A DNA stretch of 64,000 nucleotides, from positions 1 through 64,000 of the IMG/VR virus record IMGVR_UViG_3300025121_000282. One strand, written 5' to 3'. The position numbers were made by a program, and so were the translations under genes. Under the pieces are notes generated by a model, which saw only the letters and a program-made list of their open reading frames with translations, ran no database searches and was not told the DNA's origin. Below are positions 8,527 through 61,008 of this stretch, one piece after another; within the stretch, counting starts at the first letter, position 1, and each line of letters begins with the position of its first letter.

Positions 8527-9170
8527 TCTACGGGCTTGACCCATCCCTAAATGGATTTGGTTGGGCGAAGCTGAATGGTTCTGGGCTGTTTGCAAATAGC
8601 GGCAGAATCCACACTTCGCCTAAAAACCAATTTGTCCATAGGCACTGGCACATAAAAACAGAGTTGGGTTCCATCATAGAGCCTAACTCTGTTGTAGGCA
8701 TTGAGAGCGTAGCCTTTGAAGGCACTCAATCCGAGGGGTTGTATGCCCTGTACACACACACAATGGAAGTGTTGTGGCAAAAGGGGTGTGACGTTGTACT
8801 CTTTGACCCCACTACCCTAAAGTGTCTCTCAAAAGAGAAATGGGCCGTAGACCCAGAAATAAAACCTTTTATAACTATGGACAAACCTGAGATGATACAG
8901 GTTGCCACCCAACTTTCTAATAACAATTTTAAGTCTTCAGATGAGGCAGACGCCTACTTGGCTGGGTACTTTGCAGATAGGTTTTGGCAACTGTACGATG
9001 GCCGAATAAGTGTTGGGGACCTTGGCCCATCTGAACAAAAATCTTTTGCGGGGATTAAGCAACCCACAAAAGGTAAAAATGCTGGACAGATTTTAAAAAC
9101 TGGTGCGATTTTTAGAGAAAACGTAAGATTTTTTCGATTTTCGCGCCATGACTTAAGTTTTGAGGAGTGA
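8523..9170 (+). CDS. ruvC: RuvC-like Holliday junction resolvase
   Basis: RNase H-fold acidic motifs 'GLDPSLNGFG', 'GIESVAF' and 'DEADA'. TTG start overlaps the upstream stop. Confidence 0.85.
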   Translation: MIYGLDPSLNGFGWAKLNGSGLFANSGRIHTSPKNQFVHRHWHIKTELGSIIEPNSVVGIESVAFEGTQSEGLYALYTHTMEVLWQKGCDVVLFDPTTLKCLSKEKWAVDPEIKPFITMDKPEMIQVATQLSNNNFKSSDEADAYLAGYFADRFWQLYDGRISVGDLGPSEQKSFAGIKQPTKGKNAGQILKTGAIFRENVRFFRFSRHDLSFEE

Positions 9171-9173
9171 CCC

Positions 9174-10433
9174 ATGGCTATGACATCCGCTCAGGTTGGC
9201 CTTTCTTTTTTAAAAAAGAAGTATAAAGATGTATATGACACCTCATACACAGAGATTTCCGAACAAAAACAAGTACCACACATACCTACTGGAAGTATAA
9301 TTCTTGACAACCTTATAGGCGGCACCCGGATAGACGGCAACAAGAGAGTGTGTCCCGGGTGGCCCAAGGGCAAAATCGTAGAGTGTTACGGGCATGAGAG
9401 TTCTGGTAAGTCTACAGTAGCCATGCACTACTGTGCCCAGATTTTGGCTGCAGGTGGGTCTGTTTGTTATGTAGACCTGGAGAATGCATTTTCGCATGGG
9501 TACGCGAAAAACATGGGCATCGACATACACAGCGATAGATTTATTTTGTTGCAACCGTATACATTTGAGGACGCATTTAATATTATAGAAGTTATGGTTG
9601 AAGCAAAGGTTGATGCAGTCATCATAGACTCGGTGTCCGGATTGATCCCTAAAGCTGTGTTTGAGGCCGAATTAGGCACCGGTCAACAGGTAGACTCGTT
9701 ACCTAAGTTGATGTCCCAGAATTTGAAAAGGGTGGTCCAACTACAAAGAAAGTGCGGGCTGATTACCACCATTTTCTTTGTGAATCAGGTTCGTGACAAA
9801 ATCAAGACCAGTAAGTACGACACCGGTCCCAATGAGGACACCAGCGGTGGCCGCGCTCTTAAGTTTTATGCAACACTAAGAATAAAGCTTAGGAGAAAAT
9901 CCATCGAATCGGCTATGGTCAGGGACCCCCTTACTGGAGATTCTAGCAAGCAGGCCATATCAAACGTCATCCAGGTGACTGGGGTTAAGAACAAGATAGA
10001 TTCTAGACAAAACCATACCGCACTTATGAACATAAGATACGGACATGGCATCGACAATTATAGGAGCATAATGGACATAGCCATTATGCGCAAGATTATA
10101 ACAAAGTACAACAAAACATACCTTGAGTATGTAGGCAGTTCTCCAGAGGTGTCATTCGGTAGGCCCGCTGACGATGGTACTTGGTCCCCCATGGCTGGCT
10201 CCAAAAATGGCATTGAACAATGTAGAGCGTTCATCATAAATAACCCATCTGTGTTCAAGGATATCCTGTCTAGGGTGATGGAATACTTGTCTACTGGTGT
10301 GCAGGAAATAAGTTCCGAAATGGTGGAAGGTGAAGAGCTTGAGTCCCAAACCGTGGGTGGTCAAGAAGATTTAGAGGCAGATGAAAACGTCCCAGATATT
10401 GCTGATTTGATCGGGGATGATGACATAGAGTAG
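9174..10433 (+). CDS. recA: RecA/UvsX recombinase
   Basis: 'IPTGSIILD', Walker A GHESSGKS, 'IIDSVSGL', 'FVNQVR' and 'GGRALKFYA'. Confidence 0.97.
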   Translation: MAMTSAQVGLSFLKKKYKDVYDTSYTEISEQKQVPHIPTGSIILDNLIGGTRIDGNKRVCPGWPKGKIVECYGHESSGKSTVAMHYCAQILAAGGSVCYVDLENAFSHGYAKNMGIDIHSDRFILLQPYTFEDAFNIIEVMVEAKVDAVIIDSVSGLIPKAVFEAELGTGQQVDSLPKLMSQNLKRVVQLQRKCGLITTIFFVNQVRDKIKTSKYDTGPNEDTSGGRALKFYATLRIKLRRKSIESAMVRDPLTGDSSKQAISNVIQVTGVKNKIDSRQNHTALMNIRYGHGIDNYRSIMDIAIMRKIITKYNKTYLEYVGSSPEVSFGRPADDGTWSPMAGSKNGIEQCRAFIINNPSVFKDILSRVMEYLSTGVQEISSEMVEGEELESQTVGGQEDLEADENVPDIADLIGDDDIE

Positions 10434-45575: not shown

Positions 45576-48407
45576 ATGTCCGAAGGAATCAATAAAATAC
45601 TACGCAGTTTGCTTGTACTTAATGACAAGCCCGACCAAGAGAATGCAGCTAGGAATTTTGAACAGGTTTTAGTATATAGAATAGACTTTACTGAAGATGA
45701 AGAGAAAGAGATCTTTAATAAAATAAAGAACCACTTTTCTACCTATAGAGAAACCCCTACTATTCAAGACTTGCGTGATGCATTTGAGTTAGAAAAGAAT
45801 CCTGGGGCCATTTTAGTTTTAGATGAAATTTCGAAAGAACCTTGTTACGTCCGCAGTTCTTTTGAAGCTTTGGTTATGGGAGAACTGGAGAAGCAAAGAA
45901 TAGCCAAAATCCATATTTTGGCCAAAGAGTCAGCGCACATAGCATCACATGGCTTAAAAATAGGCAAAGTAGAGCTAAAGGGAGTCAATGATGCCATTCG
46001 TCATTTCACCGGTGGAGCCGACTCTCTACTTGTGATGAATAACGGCGTCAGATTGTCTGGCGATGTGACCCAGGACCATGACGACTTTATAGAAGAAGTT
46101 GAGTACACCCACTCGCACCCAGAAGAAGCTTATGGGTGCCTTACTGGTATAATCCAGGTTGATGAAGGGTGTATGGGGGTAAAACCCTCTGAATTCTGGG
46201 CACACGCTGCATACAGCGGGGGGTTGAAATGTATTAGTGGGGGGTCACGTATTTTTGATAGCAGAGTAGGCATTTTACGTGAAGCCCGAGATGTATACCA
46301 GAATGGTGCCGTAGGTCTGTACACCCACTCATTAAACCACGCCACTGGACAAATCGAATTGGCTGGCGTTAGCCACATACAAGAAAACGGAGTTCGACCT
46401 GTATTTGTACTTGAAAGCTCTCAAGGCCGACAGACAGGGGTCTCAGACAACCACCCATTTCTTACACCTAATGGGTACGTAGAACTTAAGGACCTTAAGA
46501 TTGGAGATTGGATTGCAGTTCCATCTCGTCTTCCAATCCCACTCAGTGCAACCAATCAATTTACTGATGCTCATGCAAAATTGATTGGCTATATGCTGGG
46601 GGGCGGATACATGAACAAAGGTCTGACTTTTGTTACTGTGTCTGACGCCATTAGAACAGATTTTATTGAGCAACTGGTTACTATGGGGTATGTAGAAGGA
46701 AAAGCTACCCCATTACACCCACATTTTCGGTCCACATTTCCCAAAACTAGAGTGCCCACATTACGTATGGGCCATTCTGCTCGTAGTACTAAACGTTATT
46801 GTGCTTCCCCATTGTTACTGTTATTACAATCTTTGGGGCTAATGGGTAAAATTGCGTCCACCAAATTTATTCCAAATCAGCTGTGGTCTATGTCGGATCA
46901 TCAGTTAAAATTACTGGTTGGGGCCATGTGGTCCACTGATGGCCACCTCTCTGTGTGGCGCAATGGTAAGGGTAAAAGGGTACCATCAGTCAAAATTAAG
47001 TACACCACCAAAAGTAGACAACTGGGGGCAGATTTACAATTAGTCTTGCAACGTTTGGGGATTCGTACCTCGTTGGACCGGCACTGGGTTAAATACAAAG
47101 GAGAACGAAGACTGTATTGGACAATAGCAGTTATAGGCCATTCGGCTAAATTCAAATTCTTAACAGACATTGTGGTGATTGGCAAGACTGAAGCTTGTCG
47201 TCTTGCTATTGAAGCGCTTGAGACCCAGCGTGATACATGTGATGACCACATACCTCTGTCTGTATTTAAGAATGTCAAGATTCCACTTCGGGCTGTAAAC
47301 AAAACAGGCAAGACCCCTGTTTACATTGGTTCTATAACCAAGAAGCAAAAAAAAGTGTCTAGAACTGTGGCACTACAATTTGCTTCTGTGCTGAATGACC
47401 CTAGTATCAATACACTGTTGAGTGACCATTTAAACTGGGAACAGGTCCGCTCGATAGTGTGTACTGGTGAGGAGATGACATATGACCTGTCTGTGCCGTC
47501 TAACGAGAACTTTGTTGTAGACGGCTTTGTTACCCACAACACTACTTTTGCTTTAAACTGGGCATACTTTACTGCTGTGTTTCTTAGGAAGAATGCTGAG
47601 TATTTTAGCCTGGAAATGCCATACAAACAGGTTAGACGCATACTAAAGGTGATGCATTCTACTCATTGGAAGTTTACTGATGCACCTTCTGAGGGTGGTC
47701 TCGGGTGGGAACCACTAGAATATAAGAAAGTGCGAGATGGCAAACTAACCCCAATTGAGTTAGAGCGCCTTAAGTACATATCCAAGGACCTTTCAAATCA
47801 AGAGTTACATGGGGCAATACACGTAGTCAAACCCGACCGTGAAGTAACTATAGCAGACCTTAGATTTGTAGCCGAGGCCCAGCATAAGAAGACACCTCTC
47901 TCTGTTATATTTATAGACTACTTGCAATTAGTACAGTCTTCGGATAAGTCTTTAAGGTCAACTACAGAACGGCAAAATGAAGTAGCCCGCGCAGGTAAGC
48001 ACCTCGCCATGAATTTCAATGGTGGTGCAGGGATAGCGGTGATAGGCCTGTGGCAGATCAATAACGAAGGCTACAAACACGCCCAGAAGAAAATGGAAGC
48101 TAAGGAAGAAAAGAAAGGTGGTGTATACGATTTGTCTCACCTTTCTTGGGCAAACGAACTAAAGAATGCCGCCGATTATGTTACATACACCTATGTTGAT
48201 GATGACCTTCGTGCTACAAACGAGGCCATTATAGGCAATATGAAAAACAGAGATAATAGCATCTTTTCTGAAGCTAGAATGAGAGTTGAATGGGGGCAAC
48301 GTAAGTTGGAGTCCCTAATGATCAACTCACCCCTATCTGCCAACAAATCATTTGAAACAGCAGGCGTGAAGGACTTAGACATCGATGTCCTCCTCGGCGG
48401 TCCTTAA
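45576..48407 (+). CDS. dnaB: DnaB-like replicative helicase containing an intein
   Basis: Walker A 'AYSGGLK|TT' interrupted by an intein, 'YFSLEM', 'IFIDYLQL', 'WQIN' and 'MKNRD'. Confidence 0.92.
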   Translation: MSEGINKILRSLLVLNDKPDQENAARNFEQVLVYRIDFTEDEEKEIFNKIKNHFSTYRETPTIQDLRDAFELEKNPGAILVLDEISKEPCYVRSSFEALVMGELEKQRIAKIHILAKESAHIASHGLKIGKVELKGVNDAIRHFTGGADSLLVMNNGVRLSGDVTQDHDDFIEEVEYTHSHPEEAYGCLTGIIQVDEGCMGVKPSEFWAHAAYSGGLKCISGGSRIFDSRVGILREARDVYQNGAVGLYTHSLNHATGQIELAGVSHIQENGVRPVFVLESSQGRQTGVSDNHPFLTPNGYVELKDLKIGDWIAVPSRLPIPLSATNQFTDAHAKLIGYMLGGGYMNKGLTFVTVSDAIRTDFIEQLVTMGYVEGKATPLHPHFRSTFPKTRVPTLRMGHSARSTKRYCASPLLLLLQSLGLMGKIASTKFIPNQLWSMSDHQLKLLVGAMWSTDGHLSVWRNGKGKRVPSVKIKYTTKSRQLGADLQLVLQRLGIRTSLDRHWVKYKGERRLYWTIAVIGHSAKFKFLTDIVVIGKTEACRLAIEALETQRDTCDDHIPLSVFKNVKIPLRAVNKTGKTPVYIGSITKKQKKVSRTVALQFASVLNDPSINTLLSDHLNWEQVRSIVCTGEEMTYDLSVPSNENFVVDGFVTHNTTFALNWAYFTAVFLRKNAEYFSLEMPYKQVRRILKVMHSTHWKFTDAPSEGGLGWEPLEYKKVRDGKLTPIELERLKYISKDLSNQELHGAIHVVKPDREVTIADLRFVAEAQHKKTPLSVIFIDYLQLVQSSDKSLRSTTERQNEVARAGKHLAMNFNGGAGIAVIGLWQINNEGYKHAQKKMEAKEEKKGGVYDLSHLSWANELKNAADYVTYTYVDDDLRATNEAIIGNMKNRDNSIFSEARMRVEWGQRKLESLMINSPLSANKSFETAGVKDLDIDVLLGGP
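46230..47540 (+). mobile_element. intein (437 aa) with LAGLIDADG-type endonuclease in DnaB
   Basis: Starts CISGGS; block B 'VSDNHP'; motifs 'LIGYMLGGG' (degenerate) and 'AMWSTDG'; ends 'GFVTHN' followed by Thr. Confidence 0.95.
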
Positions 48408-49574: not shown

Positions 49575-52352
49575 ATGGACATGTTTTCTTTGTCTCGCGC
49601 TATAGCGCGTCCCGACTGGTTGGACGAATGCAAAACCAGGGTGGTCGGGTCATTACAGGAACTGTCGGATTTGGTGGACGAGGTCTTATCTCAACCTAAG
49701 CCTTGTGTTGCCTCAGACATAGAGACCACGGGTCTGGACGCCAGGGTATACAGAGCAGACCAGCTTGACATAATAGAAAAAATACGTAGAGAGAAGCCCA
49801 TCCAATATAGAGAGTGGTCTCCTAGTGAAATAGAATGGGTACACAAAGTAGGGCACACCACTATAGATAAAGTTTGTGGCATTGGTTTATCACCGAATGG
49901 CATACGGGGGTACTATATACCCCTGCGTCACAGACCTTGGGATGCAAATTGCTCCAACTTGCCAATTCCACAGACTGTGGAAATACTAAAAAAGTTGTAC
50001 GCCAACGCTACCATTGTAGAACACCACTCTAAATATGATAATGAGGTTATGGAGTATGACCTAGGTATACCCATGTCTGGTATCAGTTTGCACGATACCA
50101 TGATAAAACATTATGTTCTAAATTCCAACGCTAAACGCCATGGTCTTAAGGGACTGGCTAAAGATTTGTTGGACATGTCGATGATTGAGTTGGAAGACTT
50201 ATTTCCTCATGCTGTAGGAAAAGGGAAGAAAGAACGGGTAGAAGTTCAAAATCTTTTCCCTGAAGAGATTGAAGAGTACGGGTGCAGTGACGTCATTGTT
50301 ACATACCGCTTGGATAAATTTTTAGACTACCACTGCTGGATTAAGAGGGGCACACGGATAGATCAGCACTCTCATTTTTCGCACCCAAACGGCTCCATGC
50401 GGGTTAAAGAGGTAGACAGCTTTAAAAATTTGGTTCAGTCTTTAGAAAATCCTATTAATAATGAAAAGCAGCACGGGGAGTGGGTCAATCTCTTTGTTTT
50501 CCAGAGAGACCTGCTGTCAATAGAACACAGACTGGTAGACGCCATTAGAGATACTGAGAGGCGCAGAGTCAAACTTAACATACCTATGTTGGAGCAAAAC
50601 AAGGCCAACATAATTGTAAAACTTGCTAAGATTGAACGAGAAATTCTTTCTGAATTAGGGGAAAAGGCTCTGGTCCGTATAGAGTCAGAACCTAACCCGT
50701 GGTATTGCAGTTTGAGGTCTGCTAGGGACCTGTCTGTTTTAATATACCATAACTTGGGTTTTAAACCCCTGGAAAACTTTGCAGGAACAACGGGCCCAGG
50801 AGCGGGGAATAAGGCAGCAGTGGACGCCACTGCTTCTACGGATGCTGCAATTCTGGCCGACTTGATTAAAGAAAATCCTAAAAATAAAAACATAACAATA
50901 CTGCAAAAAATACTTGACTACAGAGCCTTAGACAAGGCTCTGATGTCTTATTACGAGCCTGTTCTTCAGTCAGTTGATCCCAATGGGGAGGCCAGAATAT
51001 CGTATAGCCCCTGGTCTGTAGATACCGGTCGTCTCGCTGCAAGGTCAGGTAATTACCTAGTTGATGGATACTCTGAAGTACAGTGGCACGCCATCCCGTC
51101 TCCGGATGAACTCTCTCCTCAAGAAGTGAATGACCTTAAGAGTATGGTCGTCCCTAGAGAGGGGTACATACTCTGTTCTGCCGATTTTAGTGGTGAAGAA
51201 CTGAGGATTGCCGCAAACCTATCTAGAGAAGAGAAATGGATCAAAGAGTTTCTGGAGGGTACTGGGGATCTACACTCTATTACGGCTAGAATTCTATACG
51301 ACCTGGGTGACAATGGCACACCTACCAAGTCTCAGAGACAGGCAGGTAAGAGAACCAATTTTGCCAAATTATATGGTGGAGGTGGCCCCGCCATAGCCCG
51401 CGCAGTGGGGGCTGCGGACGCAAGTGAGGGCTGGCGCCTAGCAGGCAAGCTCGAATCCGGTCTCCCAGGAATTGCCGCGTGGCAAAAGCGTCAGGAGAGC
51501 GTGGCGAAGCAGCTTGGATTTGTAGTTACAGCTGCAAAGCGCGTCAGATTAGTTCCGCAGATGTTCCCGGATGTAGCAGACGAGCGTGAGTTCCGCAAGA
51601 TTTACGCGTATGGGGTAAGAACGTCAATCAATACTGTTGTCCAGGGCACCGCAGCAGACATTATCAAGTTGGCTATGTCTCTATTAAGGAATAGATTTAA
51701 AAAAGAAGGTTGGAGTATGGACATTGTGGCTATGTTGCACAACGTTCACGACGAGATACTATTTGAAATCAACCTGAAGTGGCTGCACAAAGTTATCCCT
51801 GTTATCGTTGAGTGTATGGAGATGAAGAATATCCTAATGAAACTGTGGGGGTGGGTTGTCCCACTTGTTATTGAGCCCGCTATCGGCATGGACTGGACTG
51901 CCAAATACAAGTGGGAGTCCATACACAAACCCCCGTGTGAGAACTGCAAGGATGGGATTCCCGCAGAGTCCAAGAAAGATTACGAGTGTGGAAAGTGTGG
52001 CAGGCAGGTAGTTCCAAAAGAGTGGGGGGTCAGCCAAGAGGACATAGATGCAGAAACATCCAAAATAAGTAGCCACGCCACCCTTAAAGTACTACAGCCC
52101 AAAGAGGAACCTCGACCAGTACCTGTTATGCTACAGTCCGGTGTTATTAGATACAAACTGGCAAGCCCGCTGAGTAAACGCACGGCACAGCTATTGTTTA
52201 CTGCTGTGAATGCATCCCAGGGTTCAGAGCCCCTGGTTGTTTATGATTCTGTAGGGAATGTGATTTTTGACGAATCTGAGGGGATTAAGATTGACTACAA
52301 CCTGTTCAAAGAGAACGTAGACAAGCATCATTTGGTTGGTGTGTTGAATTGA
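49575..52352 (+). CDS. polA: family A DNA polymerase with 3'-5' exonuclease, no 5' nuclease
   Basis: ExoI 'SDIETTG', ExoII 'HHSKYD', ExoIII 'YGCSD'; motif A 'ADFSGEELR', motif B 'RQAGKRTNFAKLYG', motif C 'VHDE'. Confidence 0.96.
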   Translation: MDMFSLSRAIARPDWLDECKTRVVGSLQELSDLVDEVLSQPKPCVASDIETTGLDARVYRADQLDIIEKIRREKPIQYREWSPSEIEWVHKVGHTTIDKVCGIGLSPNGIRGYYIPLRHRPWDANCSNLPIPQTVEILKKLYANATIVEHHSKYDNEVMEYDLGIPMSGISLHDTMIKHYVLNSNAKRHGLKGLAKDLLDMSMIELEDLFPHAVGKGKKERVEVQNLFPEEIEEYGCSDVIVTYRLDKFLDYHCWIKRGTRIDQHSHFSHPNGSMRVKEVDSFKNLVQSLENPINNEKQHGEWVNLFVFQRDLLSIEHRLVDAIRDTERRRVKLNIPMLEQNKANIIVKLAKIEREILSELGEKALVRIESEPNPWYCSLRSARDLSVLIYHNLGFKPLENFAGTTGPGAGNKAAVDATASTDAAILADLIKENPKNKNITILQKILDYRALDKALMSYYEPVLQSVDPNGEARISYSPWSVDTGRLAARSGNYLVDGYSEVQWHAIPSPDELSPQEVNDLKSMVVPREGYILCSADFSGEELRIAANLSREEKWIKEFLEGTGDLHSITARILYDLGDNGTPTKSQRQAGKRTNFAKLYGGGGPAIARAVGAADASEGWRLAGKLESGLPGIAAWQKRQESVAKQLGFVVTAAKRVRLVPQMFPDVADEREFRKIYAYGVRTSINTVVQGTAADIIKLAMSLLRNRFKKEGWSMDIVAMLHNVHDEILFEINLKWLHKVIPVIVECMEMKNILMKLWGWVVPLVIEPAIGMDWTAKYKWESIHKPPCENCKDGIPAESKKDYECGKCGRQVVPKEWGVSQEDIDAETSKISSHATLKVLQPKEEPRPVPVMLQSGVIRYKLASPLSKRTAQLLFTAVNASQGSEPLVVYDSVGNVIFDESEGIKIDYNLFKENVDKHHLVGVLN

Positions 52353-52735: not shown

Positions 52736-53428
52736 AAATACATGTCAGCAGATACTGAATACCCCACCACTAGGGTTATAATTAAGTCTCTTGGCGGAGT
52801 AGTTGTTGAACAACTAAACGAACAAGAGTACTTGGCAAAGATCCCGATCAATGCCCATGATAGTCCAGTCGGCAAACTCGCTGCACTCGCCTCTTTGGTG
52901 GGTAGTAATGGGCTTGCCGGTTCTGAGGTAGTAAACGAGTACCTAACTGGATTGGGATTTACGACTTGCTTAACTAGCCATTTGAGGTTTGTACTAAAAG
53001 AAATAGAAGCAAAAAGACTGACTTGGGGCGACGCCCTAAAAATGTTGCAAACGCCAGTAAGTCAGGACCTGATCTATAGAATAATTGTCAAGCCTATGGC
53101 ACTTGAACATCTGAGTATGTTCGTGTCAGACGGGATTAGTCACGGGTACGGCTTTGCCTGGGCAGATCGAGACACTATAATCATCGACCGGTTTCTTCCG
53201 GGTGATTTTATGTCTGAAATAAACGACCTACCTCAAGTGCAGTGGACTACCAACGAAAGTGGGTTTATTTCCGGATTCCAAAAGCCACTTTCAGGTGGCT
53301 GGCAATTGCTTCTGTGCCCCGGTAACAGTAAGCTGATACTGGGTGAGAGTACTGTACCCATGGCAGGCTTGTCTGTGAACGTACATAAGGAATTTAGGGT
53401 GTCATTCTCTACACCAGGAATATTTTAA
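52733..53428 (+). CDS. hypothetical protein (probable start ATG 52742)
   Basis: 231-aa ORF; GGAG lies 10 nt upstream of ATG 52742. Confidence 0.65.
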   Translation: MKYMSADTEYPTTRVIIKSLGGVVVEQLNEQEYLAKIPINAHDSPVGKLAALASLVGSNGLAGSEVVNEYLTGLGFTTCLTSHLRFVLKEIEAKRLTWGDALKMLQTPVSQDLIYRIIVKPMALEHLSMFVSDGISHGYGFAWADRDTIIIDRFLPGDFMSEINDLPQVQWTTNESGFISGFQKPLSGGWQLLLCPGNSKLILGESTVPMAGLSVNVHKEFRVSFSTPGIF

Positions 53429-53970
53429 TGTCTACTAAAAAGGTTGGTGAGTACGAACCTTCTAAGGCTAAATTAATAGAGCATCGTAAGGTGCTGTGGT
53501 CCGCCAAGACTGTACCTGTATACTACGAGAAGTCCACGTGGAAGTTCTTTGCTTTTCCTGACCCGGCGGACCTAGAAAACATACTCACTGCTGAAACCAT
53601 GCATAAGCTATGCGACCAACTTGACGGGTGGGACAAGACCCAAGCCCATAAGTTTGTGTGGCACAAAGAGATTTGGATTGTGTTTGTAAATGACCTTAAG
53701 ACTTTTAGATTTGACCTCCATGTTGTAGACGTGGGCACCCACCCACTAATCTCGATAAGGTATAAAAACCAGCCGAACGGCTATTACAGCAAGACCACTA
53801 AAATCCCATACAGCCCCGTTGCTGAATCCACTCTAAGAACTTACCTGAAGACACTGAACAGCGATGTTGACAGAATTGTAAGTGAAGATTCTATCCGCAT
53901 GGCTTTCCCACTAGTTTTTGGGGAGAAACCGCCCGTATCTAAACGGTTCAAGCACTTGGAAATGGACTAA
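53428..53970 (+). CDS. hypothetical protein
   Basis: 180-aa ORF with TAATG coupling. Confidence 0.65.
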   Translation: MSTKKVGEYEPSKAKLIEHRKVLWSAKTVPVYYEKSTWKFFAFPDPADLENILTAETMHKLCDQLDGWDKTQAHKFVWHKEIWIVFVNDLKTFRFDLHVVDVGTHPLISIRYKNQPNGYYSKTTKIPYSPVAESTLRTYLKTLNSDVDRIVSEDSIRMAFPLVFGEKPPVSKRFKHLEMD

Positions 53971-53975
53971 TTACA

Positions 53976-54290
53976 ATGTCTGTCACAAAATTTAATGTAG
54001 AATATACAGTTCGTGCTTGTCAGCCCAGTGTAAATGCCGCAGCCCCTGTTACAGAATACTTAGAAGTGCCATACCTAACAGTTGAGGCCTGGGTCGGTGC
54101 AATGAAGAAAGTGGGAAGTTTGGTATTTGACGATCCCATGTTTGGTAAGCTTGGTTTTGTTGATAGTAACGATGTTTGGCACACCCTCCATACACACGTT
54201 GTTACTACAGTTACAAGTCTGTCTCAAACTGATCGGAACTTTTTACAGACTCCAGAGAGCCGGGCACTACTACTTGGAAACAGGCCATAA
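53976..54290 (+). CDS. hypothetical protein
   Basis: 104-aa ORF in a tight operon. Confidence 0.6.
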   Translation: MSVTKFNVEYTVRACQPSVNAAAPVTEYLEVPYLTVEAWVGAMKKVGSLVFDDPMFGKLGFVDSNDVWHTLHTHVVTTVTSLSQTDRNFLQTPESRALLLGNRP

Positions 54291-54293
54291 ACA

Positions 54294-54749
54294 GTGTCTG
54301 GGTTCAAACGAGACGAGGTTGTAGCCCTTCCTGGGTTCGAATCAACAGACCGCAAAACTTGGCTCAGGCTGAACACAATCATGGCTGACGAAAATCTGAT
54401 GCGACGGTTACACATGGGCCTCCCAGTTGGAAATCTCAAAGACCGCACTCAAGACCTTTATTTTGTAGAAGCCGCTAAGCACTTTGGAATCCCAATCGAA
54501 GAAGTCACCCCAGAACAGCGTCGCCAGATGAAGGATATTCTATTCGGTCAGCTGTATGGTCAATCTGAAGAAGTAAAAGCACTTCGTGCTGAGGCCAAGT
54601 TCATGAATTTTGCCGAAGGCCTCCCTTATGGCATGCCAGACAAACTTGTGGAACAACCATCAGACAAATACAGACTTGCTAGACAGCAGGCAATGGCTAA
54701 CGTGTGGAGAATAGTGTACGGGTTGCCAGACGAGCCCACTGAAGACTAA
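54294..54749 (+). CDS. small protein with PolA fingers/O-helix-like repeats
   Basis: 'DLYFVEAAKHFGIPIEEVTPEQRRQMKDILFGQLYG' matches PolA motif B and its upstream helices; two further degenerate copies follow. Confidence 0.65.
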   Translation: MSGFKRDEVVALPGFESTDRKTWLRLNTIMADENLMRRLHMGLPVGNLKDRTQDLYFVEAAKHFGIPIEEVTPEQRRQMKDILFGQLYGQSEEVKALRAEAKFMNFAEGLPYGMPDKLVEQPSDKYRLARQQAMANVWRIVYGLPDEPTED

Positions 54750-54847: not shown

Positions 54848-55303
54848 ATGGCAATGGTTCGCGCAAAATACCGGTGCATGGCCTTGACCCAGCATTATGA
54901 TGGTCATACAACAGCAACGTTTCGCCCTGTTTACCGCAATAGTAAACAAGGACCGGATGAGGAAAACAAACTATTCAGCCTGGAGACACCATCCGGCGAG
55001 GCTGAACTGAACTACACCGAGTGCCCAGCCGATTTAAAAGCTGGTGATTTTTATTATATTGACATGGAAAAATGTACTGGTGAAGAATGCCCACAGGCTT
55101 GGACCATAACAGGGACTGAGCGGCAAGCTGGATGGAACAACACTAAAATTACTTTAGCTCTTCCATGGCAATACTCCTCTGCAAATCCCCGATGCGGTTC
55201 TGTCCAGCTTGGGATTACTCGCCAGGAGACCGCTGACTTATTTACTCCTTTTGGTAGTAAGTGGAAAGTGACATTTAGTTTCGCTGAAAAGTCAGCTGAC
55301 TAA
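54848..55303 (+). CDS. hypothetical small beta protein, apparently two tandem domains
   Basis: 'VRAKY...TPSGEAEL...GDFYYIDM' followed by a similar '..CGSVQL...GSKWKVTF'; GGAG ribosome-binding site. Confidence 0.65.
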   Translation: MAMVRAKYRCMALTQHYDGHTTATFRPVYRNSKQGPDEENKLFSLETPSGEAELNYTECPADLKAGDFYYIDMEKCTGEECPQAWTITGTERQAGWNNTKITLALPWQYSSANPRCGSVQLGITRQETADLFTPFGSKWKVTFSFAEKSAD

Positions 55304-56332: not shown

Positions 56333-56360
56333 GTACTCCATAACTAGTAGTGTGGAGTGT
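56333..56360 (+). promoter_or_regulatory. hairpin overlapping the Shine-Dalgarno sequence of the PARP gene
   Basis: actcca (56335-56340) / tggagt (56353-56358); TATAAT at 56322-56327 just upstream. Confidence 0.4.
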
Positions 56361-57910
56361 CTCAAGTGGGAACTATTGCGCACAATGTCGTCCTCAACTT
56401 CACTGATCTGACTGGCGACAAGACCGGCTGTGTAACACTTGGCTCCAATAAGTTCTGGAAGGGCCACGTGGTTGATCACGGAAATGGTACTGCAGACTTC
56501 GAGTGTAAGTGGGGCCCTACAGGAGAGCCTGGGTCAGACAAAGGTAGCAAGAGGGGGATTTCACTTGCTGAGGCCATCAAGATTCTCAATTCGAAAGTGG
56601 CCGAGAAGGAAAAGAAGGGTTACACCCGCCTTCAGGTACGGGATGATGCTGAAGAGGCCGCCAAGCAGGCAGCGAAGGGCATCGTAGCGGCTGTGGCTCC
56701 TGGCATTGCAGCTGCTCCAGCCCCCAAGCGTATTTTCCACCCTGAGGTGGGTAAGCTTCTCTCCACGATTTATGGAGCTACATCTACAGTAGTTCGAGCC
56801 GGTTTGTCATCTCAGGCGGGTGCTACAGCTAGCAATCCCATCGGAAACCTCTCCGATAGCCAACTGGACATTGGTGGGTCGATCTTGGATGAAATCGGAC
56901 TCGCTCTTGAAGCTGAATTCGGTCGAGAGTCCACCAACAACAAAGCCACCACTTTCCCTCTCGCCAAAGACGGCACTCCCAGTCCGAAAGTGATCGACCT
57001 GACCAATCGATTTATGTCCAATGTTCCAAGGGAAATTGGGCGAGAAATGCGTGGTCGTGAGAATCTTCATCGACTGGTCATCTCAAGTTATGAGCGCCTC
57101 CAGGCTCAGCGTGAATTCCTACAACTGTTGAGAGACGCGCATCTGACGCAAGCAGTCTTTCAGGCAGCAGGAGCACAGACTGCCTCCTCTGACAAAGAGG
57201 CAGTCTGGTACGACGGGTTGAATTGTGCCATCGAGCACTTGGACCCAGCAAGTCCCGAATTCCGCAGGGTGGTCGAGATCTTTAGCACTGGCCAGAGTCA
57301 GAAGAACTCAAACTGGTTTCGTAATGGTCGATCCACTCTGCGAGTGGCTAACGTTTTCAAATACTGCAGAAACGGAACGGAGTCCACTTTTAGTGCCTAC
57401 GCCGACAAGGTAGCCCGAAAGCCTGGAGCAGTTGGCAAAATCATGGCATGGCATGGTACGAAAGCCGAAAACACTATCGGGATATCCAAGCAGGGTCTTT
57501 TGATGCCTGAGAATTTGCCGCGGGGTGTGAGTCAAACTGGCAAAGCCTTTGGAAAAGGGATCTACCACGCCCCTAACTTCCTCGTTGCTGGAGTTAAAAC
57601 GGTTGGTCCTTACCCCACTGATGGTACTAATGGTGCGCTCAAGAGCATGAACTATACCGGCATGTCTGGAGCCGCTTATGGTGGCGGGAATGCCGCGGCA
57701 TACATGTTTCTTCAAGAAGTGGCTTTGGGTAAGGCTGATGTCCATTTCTCAGCTTGTTGGGATAAACACCGCCCCAACGACTTCCCGAACAACGACTTTA
57801 TCTTTGCTTGTGGTGCCAAGAACCAAGGCGGTTTTGTCCACGACGAAATTGTGACATTCGACCAGAACGCACAGAAGTTCGCTTATTTACTTCTCATCAA
57901 GAGTGTCTAG
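56357..57910 (+). CDS. PARP-like ADP-ribosyltransferase with WGR, helical regulatory and catalytic domains (start possibly GTG 56366)
   Basis: WGR-like 'SNKFW...CKWGPTG'; regulatory-like 'IGNLSDSQL' and 'DLTNRFMSNVP'; catalytic H-Y-E triad 'WHGT', 'FGKGIYHA', 'HDEIVTFD'. Confidence 0.9.
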   Translation: MSQVGTIAHNVVLNFTDLTGDKTGCVTLGSNKFWKGHVVDHGNGTADFECKWGPTGEPGSDKGSKRGISLAEAIKILNSKVAEKEKKGYTRLQVRDDAEEAAKQAAKGIVAAVAPGIAAAPAPKRIFHPEVGKLLSTIYGATSTVVRAGLSSQAGATASNPIGNLSDSQLDIGGSILDEIGLALEAEFGRESTNNKATTFPLAKDGTPSPKVIDLTNRFMSNVPREIGREMRGRENLHRLVISSYERLQAQREFLQLLRDAHLTQAVFQAAGAQTASSDKEAVWYDGLNCAIEHLDPASPEFRRVVEIFSTGQSQKNSNWFRNGRSTLRVANVFKYCRNGTESTFSAYADKVARKPGAVGKIMAWHGTKAENTIGISKQGLLMPENLPRGVSQTGKAFGKGIYHAPNFLVAGVKTVGPYPTDGTNGALKSMNYTGMSGAAYGGGNAAAYMFLQEVALGKADVHFSACWDKHRPNDFPNNDFIFACGAKNQGGFVHDEIVTFDQNAQKFAYLLLIKSV

Positions 57911-60157: not shown

Positions 60158-60592
60158 ATGACCGATAAACTCTCAGATCAACTCCGTTTTGCCATGGCTT
60201 TCTCCCGGAGAGATTTTATAGACAGAGCCCACGAGTACATTGCTGGTGCCATCATAGAGTTTTATAAGGTTAAGCTCGCTAAGAAAAATGGTTTTACTAA
60301 GTGGGTTGTACACTGGGATAACGAGTCTAAGCGGTTGATTGACAGACAACTTGTTCTGCTATTTCTGCACCCCATCCGTGGATTTAAAGACACGAAGTCT
60401 GCGGCTTTGCAGGCGCTTAGTGATATCATGGTTGGCAGCAATGGGTACCAAACTGTCGCCACTAATGATGTAAAGAAGGATTTTAAAGTTCAGGGTCTCC
60501 AGACAGGCCTAGACGAGCAAGACGCCCAAGACTTTAAAAACTGGGTCAGTTTGGCCATTGAGGCTAATCATGACCTGAGGGTCCGAAAATGA
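60158..60592 (+). CDS. KLSxQLRxA-leader protein, tandem paralogue 1
   Basis: MTDKLSDQLRFA; colinear homology to 60589..61008. Confidence 0.8.
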   Translation: MTDKLSDQLRFAMAFSRRDFIDRAHEYIAGAIIEFYKVKLAKKNGFTKWVVHWDNESKRLIDRQLVLLFLHPIRGFKDTKSAALQALSDIMVGSNGYQTVATNDVKKDFKVQGLQTGLDEQDAQDFKNWVSLAIEANHDLRVRK

Positions 60593-61008
60593 CCGATAAA
60601 CTCTCAGACCAACTTCGCTATGCAATGGCTTTCTCCCGTCGCGACTTCATCGACAGAGCCCACGAGTACATCTCAGGTGCTATCAGAGAATTCTATAAAG
60701 CTAAACTGGCCCGTAAAAATGGCCTTACTGAGTGGGTCACCCACTGGGATAACGAGGCAAAGCGTTTGGTAAATGACCAGCTTGCTGCGTTATTCTTGCA
60801 TCCGATTCGAGGTTTTAAAAACAAGAAACAAGCTGCCACTCAGGCATTCGAGGACATCTTTGAAAAAAGTGCGGGGTACCAGAGGATCGCTACTACTACC
60901 GTCAAACGAGACTTTAACGTCACCGGTCTAGTCCACAGCCTCGATGTCAGTGATGCTGATGAGTTTCGAGAGTGGGTATTGTCAGTCATCAGCGAGTCGG
61001 AGGACTAA
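60589..61008 (+). CDS. KLSxQLRxA-leader protein, tandem paralogue 2
   Basis: MTDKLSDQLRYA; shares SRRDFIDRAHEYI, HWDNE and FLHPIRGFK with the upstream gene. Confidence 0.8.
   Translation: MTDKLSDQLRYAMAFSRRDFIDRAHEYISGAIREFYKAKLARKNGLTEWVTHWDNEAKRLVNDQLAALFLHPIRGFKNKKQAATQAFEDIFEKSAGYQRIATTTVKRDFNVTGLVHSLDVSDADEFREWVLSVISESED

What the first reader, a model, noticed from the sequence alone, without database searches (positions are those of the whole stretch)
54294..54749. Stand-alone mini-protein made of repeated DNA polymerase I O-helix motifs
Against the PolA motif B consensus RxxAKxxNFGxxYG, the protein has RRQMKDILFGQLYG (preceded by the fingers-like DLY..AAKHFGIPIEEVTPEQ), RAEAKFMNFAEGLPYG and a weak RQQAMANVWRIVYG. 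The first copy looks more like cellular Pol I than the phage's own PolA 2 kb upstream. There are no palm aspartates, so it cannot polymerise. Inference: a dNTP- or primer-binding decoy, a modulator or mimic aimed at host Pol I or nucleotide-sensing defences, or a decaying fragment.
Basis: partly seen in the sequence, partly recalled or inferred. Interest (0 to 1): 0.65.

Follow-up and report, generated by a model that had tools for sequence, protein, structure and literature searches.

The report
Stand-alone DNA polymerase fingertip mini-protein
A huge groundwater phage encodes a small, conserved, non-catalytic protein cut from the nucleotide-binding "fingertip" of a Pol I-type DNA polymerase, and it belongs to a widespread, undescribed family of such phage mini-proteins whose function is unknown.

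Summary
The ORF 54294-54749 (151 aa) is real. Residues 22-94 are homologous to the family A polymerase segment running from the end of motif A through helices N and O (Pfam PF00476 at 36.6 bits, above its 34.3 cut-off; hhalign E 2e-16). Motif A's aspartate and all of motif C are missing, so it cannot polymerise.

The "second O-helix" has modest statistical support. The "third" has weak support but is conserved.

It is not debris. Against a diverged relative (neighbour-gene dS about 1.4), the hairpin has dN/dS 0.06 and the C-terminal helix 0.10.

It resembles bacterial Pol I more than the phage's own complete PolA, which lies 2 kb upstream.

New here: searches found at least 70 clusters of 43-130 aa stand-alone N/O-helix proteins, on phage contigs wherever a contig could be read. 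Several sit beside RNase H, ligase, helicase or PolA genes. In the cultured Pectobacterium phages PPWS2 and CX5 they lie in the early region. On a 39-residue tree they group apart from full-length PolAs.

Mechanism is inferred only: a non-catalytic ligand-binding or mimic module that keeps the dNTP-contacting residues (Y/H56, R76, K80, F84, Y88). Structure prediction was poor, and the dimer test gave no verdict.

The parts
54294..54749 (+). Mini-protein ORF, 151 aa, GTG start, TAA stop at 54747-54749
   Evidence: The identical protein P0001 was read on 21 contigs, the longest 341 kb.
54381..54383 (+). Alternative ATG start (M30). The true start is uncertain.
   Evidence: One gene call in the cluster starts here (P0069, 122 aa). 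In L002 the N-terminal 24 codons are cut off by an in-frame TAG, and the called ORF restarts at the equivalent place behind an AAGGGA Shine-Dalgarno-like site.
54357..54440 (+). Residues 22-49: remnant of the end of PolA motif A ('ELR') and the helices before helix N. The catalytic Asp is not retained, and residues 31-47 evolve fast.
   Evidence: The hhalign alignment starts at residue 22. dN is 0.75 for residues 31-47 against L002.
54441..54572 (+). Residues 50-93: PolA helix N, loop and helix O (motif B) hairpin, carrying Y56, R76, K80, F84 and Y88
   Evidence: Pfam PF00476 at 36.6 bits; Klenow match; hhalign; the only confident part of the AF2 model, pLDDT 76-90; dN/dS 0.06.
54582..54632 (+). 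Residues 97-113: second motif-B-like stretch (R98, K102, N105, F106, then Y112-G113 after a 2-residue insertion). It lies within the 22 codons that L002 lacks.
   Evidence: Motif-B HMM shuffle tests; alignment.
54681..54722 (+). Residues 130-143: conserved C-terminal helix, a weak third motif-B-like pattern (R130, M134, W138, Y142, G143)
   Evidence: dN/dS 0.10 for residues 123-151. Shared with P0003 and, more motif-B-like, with P0022.
54723..54746 (+). Residues 144-151: acidic, proline-containing tail, net charge -4
   Evidence: Nearly invariant in the subfamily and similar in P0022. Not a general feature of the wider family.
54429..54716 (+). Allelic patch: 37 difference positions, including two 3-nt indels, between the window and contig L001, which differ at only 6 other positions over 13.5 kb
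   Evidence: Two allele classes plus intermediates. Inside codons 57-91 all 4 differences are synonymous.
49575..52352 (+). The phage's own complete PolA (925 aa, 3'-5' exonuclease plus polymerase domain; motifs A, B and C visible in the translation). Context only, not the source of the mini-gene.

Best explanation
The gene encodes a functional, non-catalytic protein derived from a Pol I-type family A DNA polymerase. It keeps the segment from the end of motif A through helices N and O (the mobile 'fingertip'), followed by one or two degenerate O-helix-like helices and an acidic tail. It belongs to a widespread, so far unannotated family of phage stand-alone fingertip mini-proteins. These points are shown: the homology, the loss of catalytic parts, purifying selection, and recurrence as complete small ORFs in phages. 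The mechanism is inferred. The hairpin presents the same face that holds the incoming dNTP in PolA (Y/H56 on helix N; R76, K80, F84 and Y88 on helix O). It therefore most likely acts by binding a ligand of that face without catalysis, either a nucleoside triphosphate (or another phosphorylated nucleotide) or a primer-template end. The effect would be sequestration, competition or recruitment in the context of DNA replication or host take-over. The confidence of 0.5 is for the whole statement: about 0.85 for what the protein is, and about 0.3 for the ligand-binding mechanism.
For: Homology: Pfam above its gathering score, Klenow match, hhalign E 2e-16 over residues 22-94, and all top Foldseek hits are PolA, though weak. 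Selection: dN/dS 0.06 for the hairpin and 0.10 for the C-terminal helix against L002, where neighbouring genes have dS about 1.4-1.5. Between the two alleles, codons 57-91 carry 4 synonymous and 0 non-synonymous differences. Base composition matches the rest of the genome. Family: 64 hits in 1.84 billion representatives, many of them 50-100 aa and starting with Met. 72 clusters of 43-130 aa were found with a mini-protein profile. 10 of 23 IMG/VR loci are stand-alone ORFs in phage contigs of 44-392 kb. The ORFs are complete and internal to their contigs. On a 39-residue tree, 62 of 63 tips in the mini-protein part are stand-alone proteins. The window protein sits in a 14-tip clade with no full-length PolA (all are short ORFs apart from the 334-aa P0012), support 0.85. 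Across 89 short members D54, H/Y56, F/Y84 and Y88 are largely retained. Context: replication and repair genes are nearby in many cases. These include PolA, DnaB and primase here, RNase HII, ligase and PrimPol, and RNase H, PolA with a MazZ-like diphosphohydrolase, and an SF1 helicase. Precedent: a synthetic 50-residue Pol I peptide is reported to bind substrate and DNA (Mullen, Shenbagamurthi and Mildvan 1989, title seen in the reference list of PMC4082485). Its boundaries, residues 728-777, are from my memory.
Against: There is no direct evidence of any ligand or partner. AF2 models are poor (mean pLDDT 46 and 52), so the fold of the whole protein is unknown. Retention of R, K, F and Y is partly an ascertainment effect, because the searches were seeded with those residues. 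The bare hairpin lacks most of the PolA dNTP pocket (palm, metal ions). In L002 the N-terminal part carries an in-frame stop and the second motif is deleted, so only about 70 residues are really constrained. The early-gene position in Autographiviridae fits a protein-directed mimic as well as a ligand binder.
Confidence: 0.5

Rival explanations
1. Protein mimic or decoy. The mini-protein copies the exposed tip of host Pol I in order to bind a protein that normally recognises that surface, such as a host factor or a defence sensor. It would act as a host take-over or anti-defence protein rather than as a nucleotide or DNA binder.
For: It resembles bacterial Pol I, not the phage's own PolA. In Pectobacterium phages PPWS2 and CX5 (Autographiviridae) the 60-aa relative lies among the first small ORFs of the early region, 10 kb from the real polymerase. 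Relatives P0006 and the one in Acinetobacter phage MD-2021b sit in similar small-ORF clusters. The most conserved stretch of the minis is the helix N, loop and start of helix O rather than the catalytic half of helix O. The window gene carries the largest allelic patch in 13.5 kb, with dN/dS 0.39.
Against: I know of no protein partner of the Pol I fingertip. There are no PADLOC hits. Similar but smaller SNP patches occur in neighbouring genes. The conservation pattern is biased by the search words.
Confidence: 0.2
2. Replisome accessory. The mini-protein binds the phage's own polymerase, helicase or nick-processing enzymes (RNase H, ligase) as a structural adaptor, for example through its acidic tail.
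For: In the window lineage it keeps a conserved position downstream of PolA, DnaB and primase. Some relatives overlap RNase HII or DNA ligase genes. The tail resembles, from general knowledge, the acidic tails of T7 gp2.5 and gp4.
Against: The acidic tail is not a family feature: 27 tails are negative and 44 positive. Many relatives are not next to replication genes. The own PolA is complete, so nothing needs complementing.
Confidence: 0.1
3. Neutral relic of a displaced or fragmented polA gene, for example after polymerase swapping or intein or homing-endonuclease activity, still open by chance.
For: L002 has an in-frame TAG after codon 24 and a 22-codon deletion. The linker evolves fast. Inteins are active in this lineage: DnaB carries one.
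Against: dN/dS is 0.06-0.10 at dS 0.6-1.0. The gene is intact in all 21 contigs read and in three lineages. The same domain boundaries recur in at least 70 unrelated small ORFs. The minis form their own clades.
Confidence: 0.05
4. A piece of a split polymerase that completes the resident PolA in trans.
For: Split PolA genes exist in T7-like phages (PMC10201439). 277-aa PolA halves were seen in the IMG/VR loci.
Against: The resident PolA has motifs A, B and C and a full Pfam match to positions 30-380 of 381. The mini-protein duplicates a part that the PolA already has.
Confidence: 0.03

Closest known systems
Family A DNA polymerase fingers subdomain (Pfam PF00476; E. coli Pol I Klenow fragment helices N and O, motif B)
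   Same: Significant sequence homology over residues 22-94. R76, K80, F84 and Y88 correspond to R754, K758, F762 and Y766, and H/Y56 corresponds to H734.
   Different: Only about 44-73 of the roughly 400 polymerase-domain residues are present. There is no motif A aspartate, no motif C, no thumb and no exonuclease. It cannot be a polymerase.
PHROG 38792 (62-position profile, function unknown) and similar small phage ORFs, such as Pectobacterium phage PPWS2 ORF5 (annotated 'DNA polymerase', 60 aa) and Acinetobacter phage MD-2021b CDS 8583-8762
   Same: The same stand-alone N/O-helix module.
   Different: Those proteins are bare hairpins of 50-60 aa. The window protein adds an N-terminal motif-A remnant, one or two extra O-helix-like helices and an acidic tail. 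None has a known function.
Synthetic 50-residue Pol I peptide (Mullen, Shenbagamurthi and Mildvan, J Biol Chem 1989;264:19637)
   Same: From memory, nearly the same boundaries as residues 50-99 here. By its title it binds substrate and DNA (reference seen).
   Different: It is an artificial peptide studied in vitro. I could not read the paper, so affinities and boundaries are unverified.
Split exo/pol PolA genes of T7-like phages (Czernecki et al. 2023, PMC10201439)
   Same: PolA parts encoded as separate ORFs in phages.
   Different: Those pieces together make an active enzyme. Here the resident PolA is complete and the fragment is redundant and catalytically dead.

Membership tests
Family A DNA polymerase (active enzyme) | Motif A catalytic aspartate (D705 in E. 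coli Pol I) | tested here: not met
   Homology starts only at the 'ELR' end of motif A (residue 22). The upstream residues read P13-G14-F15-E16-S17 and hold no conserved Asp. The part of P0026 that BLAST aligned to residues 14-21 is an intein C-terminus, not motif A.
Family A DNA polymerase (active enzyme) | Motif B / O-helix (R..AK..NFG..YG) | tested here: met
   Residues 76-89 keep R, K, F, Y and G. Pfam 36.6 bits against a gathering score of 34.3.
Family A DNA polymerase (active enzyme) | Motif C (HDE) and the palm and thumb subdomains | tested here: not met
   The protein ends 58 residues after motif B. The Pfam match covers only HMM positions 181-224 of 381.
Stand-alone PolA fingertip mini-proteins (family delineated here; includes PHROG 38792) | A complete small ORF holding the helix N, loop and helix O module without palm motifs, encoded in a phage genome | tested here: met
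   The window protein falls in a 14-tip clade with no full-length PolA, support 0.85 on a 39-residue tree.
Stand-alone PolA fingertip mini-proteins | Shared biochemical function | not testable with these tools
   No member is characterised. Literature searches found nothing.
   Second unit: p about 0.01 in the window allele and 0 of 3000 shuffles in the L001 allele. Third unit: HMM p about 0.04, post-hoc pattern test p about 5e-4. The collinear alternative (PolA helix P) got no support.
Diversity-generating retroelement target (considered because of the allelic patch) | A template repeat copy nearby, and substitutions only | tested here: not met
   There is no second copy of the gene in the 64-kb window. 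The patch contains two 3-nt indels. Similar patches occur in other genes.

The most novel reading that the evidence does not exclude
Phage-encoded Pol I fingertip mimics are a new class of small host take-over or anti-defence proteins. They would be early-expressed hairpins that sequester nucleotides or signalling molecules, or that titrate a host factor recognising Pol I. The window protein would be an elaborated multi-helix member.
Probability: 0.25. Interest if true: 0.85.

Novelty: new variant of a known kind. Interest (0 to 1): 0.62.

Why it matters
Surveys of family A polymerases discard short fragments. One recent survey dropped everything under 200 residues (PMC12926913). As a result, a recurrent family of conserved phage mini-proteins built from the most conserved polymerase helix pair has gone unnoticed or is mis-annotated as 'DNA polymerase'.

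If these proteins bind nucleotides, DNA ends or a host partner, they would be a new kind of small replication or host take-over factor. They would also be a natural minimal nucleotide-binding module. Members occur in cultured Pectobacterium phages (PPWS2, CX5), so the question can be tested directly.

Tried and rejected
1. Megablast of 6 kb around the gene against INPHARED phages found no match.
2. Rfam scan of the whole window found no match. The promoter and terminator scan gave nothing above shuffles.
3. I searched for a second copy or template repeat of the gene in the window and found none. The DGR idea was dropped.
4. A collinear reading of the tail as PolA helices O1 to P got no support: HMMs of those columns gave no hit. 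The long BLASTP alignment to P0026 partly runs into an intein tail and an insertion, so it is not decisive.
5. AF2 with the 8-sequence family alignment gave pLDDT 45.7. With PolA segments added it gave 51.6, with only residues 50-90 confident. Foldseek against the PDB returned only PolA hits, but at E 0.03-0.5.
6. Complex prediction on a homodimer of residues 30-151 gave no verdict. It is not evidence either way.
7. The idea that an acidic C-terminal tail is a family-wide feature was rejected: 27 tails are negative and 44 positive.
8. PADLOC gave no hits for the gene or its neighbours. NCBIfam gave only sub-threshold Pol I fragment matches for the mini-protein and nothing for its neighbours.
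9. Literature searches for stand-alone fingers or O-helix proteins in phages found nothing relevant. The 1989 peptide paper could not be opened.
10. The context of the two-module protein P0012 is only a 1.25-kb contig without DNA.

Full report
**The object.** The window holds an ORF at 54294..54749 on the + strand. It has a GTG start and encodes 151 aa.
- It lies in a co-directional block downstream of DnaB (45576..48407), a primase-like gene, and a complete PolA (49575..52352, 925 aa, with 3'-5' exonuclease and polymerase domains).
- Four small genes of unknown function separate it from the PolA.
- Downstream there are more small genes and a PARP-like gene.
- The start codon is uncertain. An internal ATG at 54381 (M30) is used in one database gene call (P0069).
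- The identical protein was read on 21 contigs, mostly from groundwater metagenomes, the longest 341 kb. The source is therefore a huge phage.

**Is the polymerase resemblance real?** Yes.
- Pfam DNA_pol_A matches residues 50-93 to HMM positions 181-224 of 381, with E 3.2e-9 and 36.6 bits. This is just above the curated cut-off of 34.3.
- phmmer against PDB sequences is best on the Klenow fragment, at E 8e-6. The printed alignment shows 20 of 41 identical residues by my count.
- With the established Pol I numbering, R76, K80, F84 and Y88 correspond to R754, K758, F762 and Y766. Y56 (H in the other allele) corresponds to H734.
- A profile-profile comparison of the family against 13 PolA segments gives probability 98.7 and E 2.2e-16 over residues 22-94. 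The homology therefore reaches back to the 'ELR' end of motif A and covers the helices leading into N and O.
- The motif A aspartate is not retained, and motif C, palm and thumb are absent. The protein cannot polymerise.
BLASTP to the resident PolA gives only 18.5 bits, E 0.25. The best NCBIfam models are the bacterial Pol I equivalogs.
- Base composition is like the rest of the genome.

**Are there repeats?** I built a small HMM of motif B from the PolA alignment and scored the tail (residues 93-151) against composition-preserving shuffles.
- The second unit (residues 97-113) is reached by 32 of 3000 shuffles in the window allele. In the allele on contig L001 it scores 9.7 bits and no shuffle reaches it.
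- The third unit (residues 130-143) is not significant by HMM (114-144 of 3000). It keeps the R/M/W/Y-G spacing, and a post-hoc pattern test gives 10 of 20000.
- In the distant relative P0022 the corresponding helix carries R, N-F and Y-G at the motif-B spacing.
- The alternative reading, that the tail is simply the collinear continuation of PolA (helices O1 to P), got no support from HMMs of those columns.
- I therefore score the observation as one solid copy, one modestly supported copy and one weak copy.
- The second unit lies within the 22 codons that the 93-aa relative P0003 lacks, so it is dispensable.

**Is it debris?** No. Two further lineages carry the gene in the same place: L001 (88% identical, 151 aa) and L002 (93 aa).

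| Comparison with L002 | dN/dS | Other values |
|---|---|---|
| Neighbouring genes | 0.03-0.46 | dS about 1.3-1.8 |
| Hairpin, residues 54-91 | 0.06 | dN 0.034, dS 0.58 |
| C-terminal helix and tail, residues 123-151 | 0.10 | |
| Linker, residues 31-47 | fast-evolving | dN 0.75, dS saturated |

- In L002 the first 24 codons are still recognisable (13 of 23 identical). They are separated from the rest by an in-frame TAG, and translation restarts at the position of M30/A31.
- The constrained core is therefore the N/O hairpin plus the C-terminal helix, about 70 residues.
- The hairpin's dS is lower than that of its neighbours (about 0.6 against 1.4). This hints at some extra constraint or at more recent exchange.

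**Population variation.** The window and L001 are nearly identical over 13.5 kb, with 6 differences outside the gene.
- They differ at 37 positions within 54429-54716, including two 3-nt indels, and dN/dS there is 0.39.
- Cluster members show two allele classes and intermediates.
- Within codons 57-91 all four differences are synonymous.
- Smaller SNP clusters occur in polA and in two neighbouring genes on other contigs. This looks like recombination mosaicism, with the mini-gene carrying the largest patch, rather than a dedicated mutator.
- No second copy or template repeat exists in the window.

**The wider family (the main new result).**
- A full HMMER scan of 1.84 billion representatives with the family profile found only the window cluster and P0003 as close kin. 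It also found dozens of 50-130 aa proteins that start with Met, hold just the N/O module and stop soon after the O-helix tyrosine.
- A profile built from fifteen of these retrieved 72 clusters of 43-130 aa, many on contigs of 10-290 kb.
- A scan of IMG/VR with a single peptide pattern gave 23 loci. Ten of them are stand-alone ORFs of 60-262 aa in phage contigs of 44-392 kb. The others are genuine or split PolAs.
- Where DNA or gene tables were available, the ORFs are complete and internal to their contigs.
- Several members keep a motif-A-like start (D-[YF]-x-x-[IVL]-E) as the window protein does in degenerate form. One (P0012) has two N/O modules in tandem.
- Across 89 short members D54, H/Y56, F/Y84 and Y88 are largely retained. 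This is partly an ascertainment effect of the search.
- On a FastTree of the 39-residue hairpin (121 sequences, 22 of them full-length PolAs), 62 of the 63 tips in the mini-protein part of the tree are stand-alone proteins.
- The window protein sits in a 14-tip clade with no full-length PolA (support 0.85). A second clade of 46 tips holds 45 minis (support 0.85).
- The alignment is short and the PolA sampling is biased. This favours, but does not prove, minis that persist and spread as minis rather than arising by repeated recent truncation.

**Genomic contexts of relatives.**
- Directly after RNase HII.
- Directly before an ATP-dependent DNA ligase and a PrimPol helicase.
- Near RNase H.
- Between a divergent PolA and a MazZ-like dATP/dGTP diphosphohydrolase.
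- Before an SF1 helicase, and near a HIRAN protein.
- Among small ORFs.
- In the cultured Autographiviridae phages PPWS2 and CX5 of Pectobacterium, the 60-aa member is one of the first small ORFs of the early region. In PPWS2 the real polymerase (ORF27) lies 10 kb further on, and the mini is annotated 'DNA polymerase'.

**Structure and interactions.**
- AF2 gave low confidence: mean pLDDT 45.7 with the family alignment and 51.6 with PolA segments added. Only residues 50-90 were confident. All models are helical.
- Foldseek returned only family A polymerases, at weak E-values.
- A homodimer test gave no verdict.

**Interpretation.**
- Shown: a selected, non-catalytic PolA fingers fragment that belongs to a recurrent phage family.
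- Inferred: it works through the conserved cleft-facing surface of the hairpin. It would bind a nucleotide triphosphate or DNA end (best guess), or mimic the Pol I fingertip towards a protein partner (main rival).
- The early-gene location in Autographiviridae and the allelic patch lean towards a host-directed role. The replication-module location here and in other phages leans towards a replication-linked role.
- A synthetic Pol I peptide with nearly the same boundaries was reported to bind substrate and DNA (reference seen; details from memory).
- I found no description of such stand-alone proteins in the literature. Systematic polymerase surveys exclude short fragments.

Noticed in passing
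window 56357..57910 (+): A 517-aa protein with eukaryote-type PARP architecture in a phage: WGR (E 6e-10), PARP regulatory domain (E 3e-8) and PARP catalytic domain (E 4e-11). It is conserved on related contigs and lies 1.6 kb downstream of the mini-gene.
   Followed up: partly
window 45576..48407 (+): The DnaB helicase gene (943 aa) carries an intein with a LAGLIDADG endonuclease, by the Pfam domains listed for the identical gene on L003. The L002 orthologue is 506 aa and has no intein.
   Followed up: partly
L002:9899-10001: In the diverged relative the mini-gene's N-terminal 24 codons start with ATG and are followed by an in-frame TAG at 9971. The called 93-aa ORF restarts in the same frame at 10001. 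This could be a nonsense mutation, a sequencing error or recoding; it is not resolved.
   Followed up: partly
window 53976..54296: The upstream gene (104 aa, the fastest-evolving neighbour: 28% identity and dN/dS 0.46 against L002) is in the same reading frame as the mini-gene. Only TAA and one further codon separate them. The same in-frame arrangement holds in L002 (TAG plus two codons). There is no evidence of read-through.
   Followed up: no
window 50327-50528, 52011-52060, 53053-53065, 53644-53718: Short clusters of SNPs separate otherwise near-identical contigs of the same phage population (L004, L005, L003, L006). This suggests frequent short-patch recombination. L004 also lacks the gene at 54848..55303.
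   Followed up: partly
window 60158..60592 and 60589..61008 (+): Two adjacent genes (144 and 139 aa) are about 77% identical at the DNA level over about 240 bp, so they are a tandem paralogous pair (cross-matches).
   Followed up: no
P0012 (ENA ERZ23498363, 1253-bp contig): A 334-aa protein with two tandem N/O-helix modules and a motif-A-like C-terminus. It falls in the same tree clade as the window protein.
   Followed up: partly
L037:2220-6206: A 61-aa fingertip mini-protein lies between a divergent PolA (34 bits to Pfam) and a MazZ-like dATP/dGTP diphosphohydrolase domain protein. This may be a phage with modified nucleotide metabolism.
   Followed up: no
P0026 residues about 1000-1030: This 1319-aa PolA appears to carry an intein inserted inside motif A. 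An intein-like C-terminal block ends in H-N, directly before S-Q-V-E-L-R. This was judged by eye only.
   Followed up: no
L038:1964-2146 (Pectobacterium phage PPWS2 ORF5): A 60-aa early-region ORF is annotated 'DNA polymerase' in GenBank although it is only the N/O hairpin. The real polymerase is ORF27.
   Followed up: yes
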